This document shows, piece after piece, positions 1,258 to 1,366 of a stretch of DNA of 64,000 nt. The stretch covers positions 68,684,483 to 68,748,482 of the forward strand of contig NC_068990.1 of NCBI RefSeq assembly GCF_001194135.2. The letters are read 5' to 3'. The notes under the pieces are model-generated. The model saw only the letters and a program-made list of their open reading frames with translations. It had not been told where the DNA came from and made no database searches. This DNA comes from Octopus bimaculoides (taxonomy: Eukaryota). How positions within the stretch are numbered: the first letter of the stretch is position 1; each line of letters begins with the position of its first letter. The translations under genes and the position numbers were made by a program.

Positions 1258-1366
1258 ACATTGACAAACCTCAAGTAGGGCAAACGCGCCTGTTCATCTT
1301 GAGGCGGATATGGTCGCAGTAGCGACTTACAAGGCGCGTTTTGCCCTACTTGAGGCTTCCCAACAC
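1258..1366 (-). ncRNA. Candidate pri-miRNA hairpin
   Basis: Arms 1269-1293 and 1329-1355 pair at 25/25 positions with two 1-nt bulges. An 11-position basal stem forms only on the minus strand, where five A-C mismatches become G-U pairs. UG, UGU and CNNC motifs lie at canonical positions. Confidence 0.6.

What the first reader, a model, noticed from the sequence alone, without database searches (positions are those of the whole stretch)
1258..1366. Minus-strand hairpin with canonical pri-miRNA geometry and all three Microprocessor motifs
Seen: a GC-rich hairpin in AT-rich DNA. Arms 1269-1293 and 1329-1355 pair fully (two 1-nt bulges) around a 35-nt loop that has its own GTCGC/GCGAC stem. The basal extension (1258-1268 / 1356-1366) has five A-C mismatches on plus that are all G-U on minus, which fixes the strand and gives a stem of about 36 bp. 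If the 5p arm starts at 1353 (UCAAGUAGGGCAAAACGCGCCU, 5' U), the basal stem is 13 nt on the 5' side and 11 nt on the 3' side. UG then falls at -14/-13, UGU at +23 to +25, and CNNC (CCCC, 1253-1250) at +16 to +19. Known: these are the described Drosha/DGCR8/SRSF3 determinants, and coleoid cephalopods have a large lineage-specific miRNA expansion. Inference: a miRNA gene, possibly unannotated; I do not recognise the mature sequences. The cut site was chosen to fit the motifs, and the loop is long for a pre-miRNA.
Basis: partly seen in the sequence, partly recalled or inferred. Interest (0 to 1): 0.8.

Follow-up and report, generated by a model that had tools for sequence, protein, structure and literature searches.

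The report
Strong lone hairpin, unproven microRNA
A real and very stable 147-base inverted repeat sits at 1238-1384, but its stem is about one helical turn too long for a textbook microRNA precursor, and nothing available here shows that it is processed, conserved or single-copy, so it is most likely an ordinary young palindrome.

Summary
The hairpin is real. Minus-strand RNA 1240-1385 folds at -75.4 kcal/mol (z -9.3) and the plus strand at -67.5 (z -7.3). It is the strongest non-microsatellite hairpin in the 64 kb.

Pairing continues through 1245-1257 / 1367-1379 with probability about 0.7-1.0, which gives about 46 bp rather than about 35. As a result, CNNC and UG lie inside helix rather than at a single-strand junction. 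The implied precursor is 85 nt with a 41-nt loop, outside the under-80-nt range that MirGeneDB 3.0 reports for molluscs.

All three motifs co-occur by chance in 1-2% of shuffles. That is suggestive but weak, because the cut site was chosen to fit them.

The inner 25 nt of the arms have no substitutions, while the outer 29 have nine (Fisher p = 0.002). This fits recent homogenisation of the arms.

I found no Rfam match, no second copy in the window, no target-site duplication and no literature match. Genome copy number, orthologues and small-RNA reads could not be reached, and the organism was not identified.

My estimates: neutral or transposon-derived quasi-palindrome about 0.7 combined; bona fide miRNA about 0.12.

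The parts
1238..1293 (.). Left arm of the quasi-palindrome. Outer part 1238-1268 is diverged; inner part 1269-1293 is perfect.
   Evidence: Local alignment of 1225-1300 against the reverse complement of 1322-1400; pair list.
1294..1328 (.). 35-nt spacer. It holds an off-centre mini-palindrome GTCGC(1313-1317)/GCGAC(1322-1326) and an 8-mer, CTTGAGGC (1298-1305), that repeats the end of the right arm (1349-1356).
1329..1384 (.). Right arm of the quasi-palindrome. Inner part 1329-1355 is perfect apart from 1-nt bulges at 1331 and 1339; outer part 1356-1384 is diverged.
1245..1257 (-). It pairs with 1367-1379 and contains the 'CNNC' CCCC at 1253-1250, of which three C are paired.
   Evidence: Pairing probabilities of about 0.5-1.0 (1.0 for C1253, C1251 and C1250); duplex -13.6 kcal/mol.
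1367..1379 (-). 5' side of the lower-stem extension. U1367 of the 'basal UG' is a 1-nt bulge between two helices.
1332..1353 (-). Hypothetical 5p arm, UCAAGUAGGGCAAAACGCGCCU.
   Evidence: Sequence and motif geometry verified. 21 of 22 nt are paired.
1269..1290 (-). Hypothetical 3p arm, GGCGCGUUUGCCCUACUUGAGG.
1359..1359 (-). G1359, unpaired opposite G1265. This is position -6 relative to the proposed 5' Drosha cut (a structural 'GHG' mismatch).
   Evidence: Pairing probability 0.0.

Best explanation
This is a single-locus quasi-palindrome with 56-nt arms and a 35-nt spacer. It most likely arose by local inverted duplication, and its inner 25 bp were later re-homogenised by DNA-polymerase template switching between the arms. 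It has no demonstrated dedicated function.

Shown: the structure, its length, the sharp step between the perfect inner part and the diverged outer part, and the absence of a second copy or a target-site duplication in the window.

Inferred: the template-switch origin.

If the minus strand is transcribed, the RNA would form a stem of about 46 bp. The two Microprocessor rulers (11 bp from the basal junction, about 22 bp from the apical junction) would then disagree by about 12 bp. It would be at best a sub-optimal, non-canonical Drosha substrate. It is raw material from which a miRNA could evolve, not an established miRNA gene.
For: - Inner arms: 0 substitutions in 25 nt. Outer arms: 9 in 29 aligned nt plus a 2-nt indel. 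Fisher p = 0.002, and P(0 in 25 at the outer rate) is about 1e-4. The outer part is still far more complementary than chance (p about 2e-5). So the palindrome is old and its core is recently equalised.
- Template switching is documented to homogenise the arms of imperfect inverted repeats (PMC8604942). It can also create perfectly paired hairpins in one event. In primates, over 6,000 suitable hairpins gave at least 18 miRNA genes, about 0.3% (PMC10710096).
- The stem is about 46 bp with a paired CNNC, which is not the 35-bp design.
- There is no other copy of 900-1700 in the window apart from microsatellite, no target-site duplication and no Rfam family.
- A second non-microsatellite hairpin is present (11440-11590, -54.8 kcal/mol, z -5.0), so strong hairpins are not rare in this DNA.
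Against: - All five transitions in the outer stem keep G.U pairing on the same (minus) strand. The two-sided chance is 1/16. This hints at selection on an RNA structure, or at strand-biased mutation.
- UG, UGU and CNNC at the right distances from one cut site occur in only 0.9-2.2% of shuffles. The -6 mismatch and 5' U fit the same cut.
- No outgroup sequence was available, so the template-switch event itself is not shown.
- Genome-wide copy number is unknown, so a transposon origin is not excluded.
Confidence: 0.45

Rival explanations
1. It is a copy of a small non-autonomous transposon. Candidates are a MITE or foldback-type element that is nearly all terminal inverted repeat, or the hairpin-bearing end of a Helitron/Helentron-like element that also carries the adjacent minisatellites. 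The palindrome is then the element's own structure and any small RNAs are by-products.
For: - It is a near-perfect palindrome of 147 nt with 51-55% G+C set in 35% G+C DNA, the size and look of a MITE.
- Minisatellites lie 50-130 nt away: 15-nt unit x 6 at 1105-1191 and 12-nt unit x 2.6 at 1059-1089.
- A 9-mer of the minisatellite is complementary to the spacer (1169-1178 against 1291-1299).
- The window is rich in transposon debris.
- From general knowledge, tandem-repeat-bearing MITE/Helentron derivatives are described in molluscs. I did not re-read this here.
Against: - No second copy of the arms, spacer or minisatellite exists anywhere else in the 64 kb.
- No target-site duplication longer than 4 nt appears at any of about 2,000 boundary pairs, and none at symmetric boundaries.
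- Arm divergence rises towards the ends, whereas transposase-bound termini are usually the best-kept part.
- A 63-aa ORF across the hairpin shares no words with any of 5.8 billion database proteins. This is weak evidence, because the source genome seems absent from that collection.
Confidence: 0.25
2. It is a bona fide, probably very young and lineage-restricted miRNA gene on the minus strand. In this model Drosha cuts at 1354|1353 and 1269|1268, Dicer removes the 41-nt loop, and the 5p strand UCAAGUAGGGCAAAACGCGCCU is the guide.
For: - Motif geometry is verified at one cut: UG -14, UGU +23, CNNC +16, unpaired -6, 5' U, and 23 bp from the cut to the apical junction.
- The joint chance of the three sequence motifs is 0.9-2.2%.
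- All five transitions give G.U on the minus strand. The minus strand is 7.9 kcal/mol more stable.
- These motifs are considered ancestral to bilaterians (PMC11701709).
- Octopus miRNA annotation is stated to be an underestimate that omits species-specific genes (PMC9699675).
- Perfect hairpins made by template switching can become miRNAs (PMC10710096).
Against: - The stem is about 46 bp and there is no single-stranded basal junction at -13. CNNC is paired with probability 1.0.
- The pre-miRNA would be 85 nt with a 41-nt loop, against a median loop of 15-16 nt and under 80 nt in molluscs.
- The duplex is 21/22 paired, against a mean of 19 +/- 1.6, and U1 is paired.
- The cut site was chosen to fit the motifs. 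The plus strand gets UGU, CNNC, the -6 mismatch and 5' U almost for free from the palindromic symmetry.
- The base rate is low: about 0.3% of suitable new hairpins in primates.
- There is no Rfam hit above noise (MIR7486, E = 2.5). There is no match in the held supplements of the octopus miRNA paper, although its sequence file is not held. No paper contains the arm sequences.
Confidence: 0.12
3. It is a transcribed long hairpin that acts as double-stranded RNA rather than as a miRNA precursor. It would be a substrate for Dicer (endo-siRNA-like products phased from the open end) and/or for ADAR editing.
For: It is a 46-bp nearly continuous helix with a 19-bp perfect run, which is long enough for dsRNA-binding enzymes. 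The minus-strand G.U bias suggests the RNA may matter.
Against: There is no evidence of transcription. Known hairpin-RNA siRNA loci are, from general knowledge, much longer. I could not test this idea directly.
Confidence: 0.06

Closest known systems
Canonical animal pri-miRNA hairpin (Microprocessor substrate)
   Same: It is an imperfect stem-loop with about 22-23 bp between the proposed cut and the apical junction. UG, UGU and CNNC lie at the textbook distances. There is a mismatch at -6 and a 5' U on the putative guide.
   Different: The stem is about 46 bp instead of about 35 bp, and the basal motifs lie in helix rather than at or beyond the junction. The loop is 41 nt and the precursor 85 nt. 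The duplex is almost perfect. Nothing is known about reads or conservation.
Hairpins generated by template-switch mutations, a minority of which became primate miRNAs (Monttinen et al. 2023, PMC10710096)
   Same: A block of perfect reverse-complementarity with sharp edges sits inside less similar sequence at a unique locus.
   Different: The event is inferred from one sequence only. No ancestral or outgroup state was available, and no expression evidence exists.
MITE-derived miRNA hairpins such as the human mir-548 family from Made1 (recalled from memory, not tested here)
   Same: A near-perfect palindrome of roughly 100-150 nt consists almost entirely of two inverted arms.
   Different: There is no second copy in the 64 kb and no target-site duplication. 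Genome copy number is unknown.
pri-mir-30c-1, whose CNNC is occluded by secondary structure (PMC6298569)
   Same: The CNNC motif is present but base-paired.
   Different: In mir-30c-1 the miRNA is real and the occlusion modulates its processing. Here processing itself is unproven.

Membership tests
Animal miRNA gene (MirGeneDB / Fromm 2015 criteria) | 20-26-nt reads from both arms, with 2-nt 3' overhangs from Drosha and Dicer cuts | not testable with these tools
   No small-RNA data are reachable. Offsets can be drawn on the fold, but that is not evidence of processing.
Animal miRNA gene (MirGeneDB / Fromm 2015 criteria) | 5'-end homogeneity of the mature reads | not testable with these tools
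   No read data.
Animal miRNA gene (MirGeneDB / Fromm 2015 criteria) | At least 16 nt of complementarity between the two arms | tested here: met
   21 of the 22 nt of the proposed 5p arm are paired.
Animal miRNA gene (MirGeneDB / Fromm 2015 criteria) | Loop of at least 8 nt and a precursor length within the clade's range (molluscs under 80 nt) | tested here: not met
   The loop is 41 nt and the precursor 85 nt. MirGeneDB 3.0 gives a median loop of 15-16 nt (SD about 8) and says molluscs are under 80 nt. Caveat: I could not verify that the organism is a mollusc.
Animal miRNA gene (MirGeneDB / Fromm 2015 criteria) | Presence in a second species (required for a named family) | not testable with these tools
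   There were no hits in metagenome contigs or genome contigs. Cephalopod genomes are not in the searchable collections.
Canonical Microprocessor substrate | Stem of about 35 bp flanked by single-stranded RNA, with the cut 11 bp from the basal junction | tested here: not met
   The stem is about 46 bp. The helix continues 12 bp below the proposed junction, with pairing probabilities of about 0.7-1.0. The criterion is from PMC6298569.
Canonical Microprocessor substrate | Basal UG at -14, apical UGU/GUG and 3' CNNC at +16..+18 | tested here: inconclusive
   All three sequences are at the right distances for the cut at 1353. However, three of the four CNNC bases are paired and the UG is inside helix. 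The chance of co-occurrence is 0.9-2.2% with a free choice of cut and strand.
Canonical Microprocessor substrate | Mismatch or bulge overlapping position -6 (structural GHG) | tested here: met
   G1359 is unpaired opposite G1265. The sequence form (C at -5, purine at +5) is not met: these positions are A and U.
Known miRNA family (Rfam 15) | Covariance-model match at or above the gathering score | tested here: not met
   The best match is MIR7486 at 18.3 bits against a gathering score of 67, E = 2.5. Nothing reaches the gathering score anywhere in the window.
MITE / foldback transposon | Multiple dispersed copies | tested here: inconclusive
   There is no second copy in the 64 kb.
MITE / foldback transposon | Target-site duplication flanking the terminal inverted repeats | tested here: not met
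   The longest flanking direct repeat is 4 nt, at asymmetric boundaries. That is the chance level for about 2,000 boundary pairs.
Template-switch (quasi-palindrome correction) product | A block of perfect reverse-complementarity with sharp edges within a less similar inverted repeat | tested here: met
   0 of 25 inner positions differ against 9 of 29 outer positions; Fisher p = 0.002.
Template-switch (quasi-palindrome correction) product | An ancestral or outgroup state that lacks the converted block | not testable with these tools
   No related genome is available.

The most novel reading that the evidence does not exclude
This is a newborn, lineage-specific miRNA caught early. In this reading, a template-switch event made the perfect 25-bp core inside an older palindrome, and selection on the minus-strand RNA has since tolerated only G.U-compatible changes in the lower stem. 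The still over-long stem is processed at the apically measured site that the UG, UGU, CNNC and -6 mismatch features point to.
Probability: 0.1. Interest if true: 0.45.

Novelty: new member of a known kind. Interest (0 to 1): 0.17.

Why it matters
If it proved to be a processed miRNA, it would add one young, probably species-restricted gene to an animal's miRNA set. It would also be a non-primate example of miRNA birth from a replication-generated palindrome. That would be useful but incremental.

As it stands, the finding is mainly a caution. Motif positions read off a hand-picked cut site in a palindrome are weak evidence. The fold must be extended into the flanks before it is called canonical.

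Tried and rejected
- **Rfam.** I searched with permissive E-values on 1000-1700 and with gathering thresholds on the whole window. Only noise came back: MIR7486 at E = 2.5, and C/D-box 'hits' caused by TGATGA in the minisatellite.
- **Copies elsewhere.** A 16-mer in viral contigs gave 6 chance hits. Two identical phage contigs share 20 nt with no similarity in the flanks. A 22-nt arm pattern and a two-arm pattern gave 0 hits in metagenome contigs, and the 22-nt arm pattern gave 0 hits in genome contigs.
- **Protein-database route to orthologous DNA.** The 63-aa ORF across the hairpin found nothing. Ten long window ORFs are not in the collection.
- **Organism identification from retroelement fragments.** One fragment hit only 58-78%-identical ORFs on ENA long-read metagenome contigs from other organisms. 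A second fragment found nothing. The cephalopod assumption therefore remains untested.
- **Literature.** The held supplements of the octopus miRNA paper contain neither the arm sequences nor the predicted seed-match 8-mers. However, its miRNA sequence file (Data S1) is not held and two of its tables are truncated. A full-text search for six arm sub-sequences found no paper. The Auyeung 2013 paper is not held.
- **Target-site duplications.** The scan found nothing above chance.
- **CpG content.** The core is not unusual for this window (observed/expected 1.06 against 0.84), so it says nothing about age.

Full report

Yes. Plus-strand positions 1269-1293 and 1329-1355 are perfectly complementary apart from two single-base bulges (T1331, A1339). 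The 35-nt spacer 1294-1328 contains GTCGC (1313-1317) / GCGAC (1322-1326).

As RNA, 1240-1385 folds at -75.4 kcal/mol on the minus strand (shuffles -40.6 +/- 3.7, z -9.3). On the plus strand it folds at -67.5 kcal/mol (z -7.3). None of 200 shuffles did as well on either strand. As single-stranded DNA the z-score is -9.1.

I folded 130-nt windows across the whole 64 kb on both strands. This is the second most stable window overall and the only one in the top ten that is not microsatellite. Its dinucleotide entropy is 3.94, against 3.3 or less for the others.

**2.

The inverted repeat does not stop at 1258/1366. I aligned 1225-1300 against the reverse complement of 1322-1400. Complementarity runs from 1238 to 1293 and from 1329 to 1384.

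The minimum-free-energy pair list shows these pairs:
- 7 bp at 1373-1379 / 1245-1251
- 4 bp at 1368-1371 / 1253-1256
- 7 bp at 1360-1366
- 19 bp at 1340-1358
- 7 bp at 1332-1338
- 2 bp at 1329-1330

That is about 46 bp, interrupted only by single unpaired bases at 1372, 1367, 1359, 1339 and 1331.

In a 256-nt context the extension is paired with probability of about 0.7-1.0.

**3. Check of the miRNA model.**

For a 5p start at 1353 on the minus strand, every stated position is right:
- UG at -14/-13 (1367/1366)
- UGU at +23..+25 (1331-1329)
- CCCC at +16..+19 downstream of the 3p end (1253-1250)
- a 5' U

Two further points fit. The cut lies 23 bp below the apical end of the helix. [quoted passage not shown] MirGeneDB 3.0 argues that these motifs date back to the bilaterian ancestor (PMC11701709), so they are relevant to an invertebrate.

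The context of the motifs is wrong, however.

- The canonical substrate is a stem of about 35 bp between single-stranded flanks. DROSHA cuts 11 bp from the basal single-strand/double-strand junction (PMC6298569). Here the helix runs on for another helical turn. A ruler set at the real basal junction (1380/1244) would place the cut near 1366-1368. That is 12-13 nt away from the site implied by the apical ruler and the motifs.
- CNNC is described as lying on the single-stranded 3' tail. A structurally occluded CNNC is reported to impair pri-mir-30c-1 processing. Here C1253, C1251 and C1250 have pairing probability 1.0.
- The UG is described as marking the transition from unpaired flank to stem. 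Here U1367 is a one-base bulge between two helices.
- The implied precursor is 85 nt with a 41-nt loop. MirGeneDB 3.0 reports a median loop of 15-16 nt (SD about 8), a mean precursor of 60 nt, and says molluscs are among the clades 'tightly constrained' to under 80 nt.
- The duplex has 21 of 22 positions paired, against a mean of 19 +/- 1.6.

**4. How surprising are the motifs?**

I kept the perfect duplex fixed and shuffled the flanks, lower stem and loop. I allowed seven cut sites on each strand. In independent shuffles, 0.9% had UG at -14, UGU/GUG at +21..+25 and CNNC at +16..+18 together at some site. When lower-stem columns were shuffled as pairs, the figure was 2.2%.

In the real sequence two minus-strand sites qualify, 1353 and 1351. 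Because of the palindromic symmetry, the plus strand also has UGU, CNNC (CACC at 1371-1374), a -6 mismatch and a 5' U at 1271. It lacks only the UG.

From general knowledge of motif frequencies, only a few per cent of genuine miRNAs carry all three motifs. The likelihood ratio in favour of a miRNA is therefore small, roughly 2-5. This is my inference.

**5. Strand asymmetry.**

The outer arms differ at nine aligned positions. Five are transitions, and all five give G.U on the minus strand. Four are transversions that break pairing on both strands.

Five of five on one strand has a two-sided chance of 1/16. It fits mild selection on a minus-strand RNA. It fits equally well a strand-biased mutation process in which all changes are G-to-A on plus.

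**6. The step in divergence.**

The inner 25 nt have no substitutions. The outer 29 aligned nt have nine, plus a 2-nt indel (Fisher p = 0.002). At the outer rate, 25 clean positions have probability of about 1e-4. The outer arms are nevertheless clearly homologous: 20 of 29 match, p about 2e-5.

The simplest mechanism is an old inverted repeat whose centre was recently equalised. Polymerase template switching between imperfect inverted-repeat arms is documented to do exactly that (PMC8604942). It can also create perfectly paired hairpins in a single event. In primates, over 6,000 suitable hairpins arose this way and at least 18 became miRNA genes (PMC10710096). That is a base rate of about 0.3%.

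Selection for a perfect miRNA duplex is a poorer explanation, because real duplexes usually keep mismatches.

**7. Transposon test.**

- Nothing else in the window resembles 900-1700 apart from (TG)n.
- The adjacent 15-nt minisatellite (1105-1191) and 12-nt repeat (1059-1089) are also unique in the window.
- No target-site duplication exceeds 4 nt, and none sits at symmetric boundaries.

This argues against a very abundant MITE. It cannot exclude a family of hundreds or a few thousand copies in a genome of gigabase size.

**8. External evidence.**

I could obtain none.

- Rfam has no match.
- The arm patterns are absent from the metagenome collection, and the 22-nt arm pattern is absent from the prokaryote-genome collection.
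- The viral 16-mer and 20-mer matches are chance.
- An ORF spanning the hairpin and ten other window ORFs are not in the protein collection.
- The retroelement fragments in the window find only 58-78%-identical ORFs in contigs from other organisms, or nothing at all.

The window is a draft eukaryotic scaffold with 13 runs of N, 35% G+C, dense (TA)n and (CA)n, and reverse-transcriptase debris.

The octopus miRNA paper states that its catalogue omits species-specific genes. Its held supplements contain no match, but they lack the sequence file.

**9. Verdict.**

The hairpin is real and statistically extreme. The description of it as 'canonical pri-miRNA geometry' does not survive extension of the fold.

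My estimates are:
- unique quasi-palindrome of mutational origin, about 0.45
- transposon-derived palindrome, about 0.25
- bona fide miRNA, about 0.12
- other dsRNA role, about 0.06
- something else, the remainder

The decisive tests are cheap for anyone with the genome and small-RNA libraries: genome BLAST, small-RNA read mapping and an orthologue alignment.

Noticed in passing
window 1059-1089 and 1105-1191: Two short tandem arrays lie just left of the palindrome: GAAGGATTATCT x 2.6 and a 15-nt unit (TAGATGATGAATAGT) x about 6. Both are unique in the window. A 9-mer of the second array (AGATGAACA, 1169-1177) is complementary to the start of the spacer (1291-1299). Its TGATGA boxes cause weak, meaningless C/D-snoRNA hits in Rfam.
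   Followed up: partly
window 11440-11590 (minus strand): This is a second non-microsatellite hairpin, at -54.8 kcal/mol and z -5.0, with an 11-bp perfect apical stem (CUUUUUCAAGU/ACUUGAAAAGG). It shows that strong hairpins are not rare in this DNA. I did not characterise it further.
   Followed up: partly
window 1298-1305 and 1349-1356; 1232-1239 against 1363-1370: The 8-mer CTTGAGGC occurs both in the spacer and at the end of the right arm. CATTGTGT in the left flank is complementary to ACACAATG in the right arm. These may be footprints of the duplication history or chance matches. They allow weak alternative pairings.
   Followed up: no
window 30837-31190, 35003-35800, 36444-36695 (plus strand): Decayed non-LTR retrotransposon fragments are present, with an in-frame stop at 35273 and an assembly gap at 35801-36040. 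One piece gives a weak zf-RVT match (E = 0.006). Another is 58-78% identical to short ORFs on long ENA metagenome-assembly contigs; the two contigs examined carry RVT_1 genes next to those ORFs.
   Followed up: partly
window 14223-14447 (+) and 5581-5832 (-): These ORFs have high-complexity translations that look like fragments of mobile-element proteins (my impression). Neither has a Pfam hit at E <= 0.1.
   Followed up: partly
whole window: There are 13 runs of N (10-827 nt, 3,671 nt in total), and most are embedded in (TA)n/(CA)n tracts. This is a draft scaffold whose gaps fall in microsatellites. CpG observed/expected is 0.84, so CpG depletion is slight.
   Followed up: no
L002 1046-1065 and L006 4152-4171 (IMG/VR contigs): Two identical phage contigs share an exact 20-mer with the right arm (window 1340-1359). 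There is no similarity beyond it and no second arm. I judged this a chance match.
   Followed up: yes
window 48221-48350 (minus strand): This is another complex-sequence window with a fairly low folding energy (-47.9 kcal/mol), formed by two separate stems. I did not examine it.
   Followed up: no
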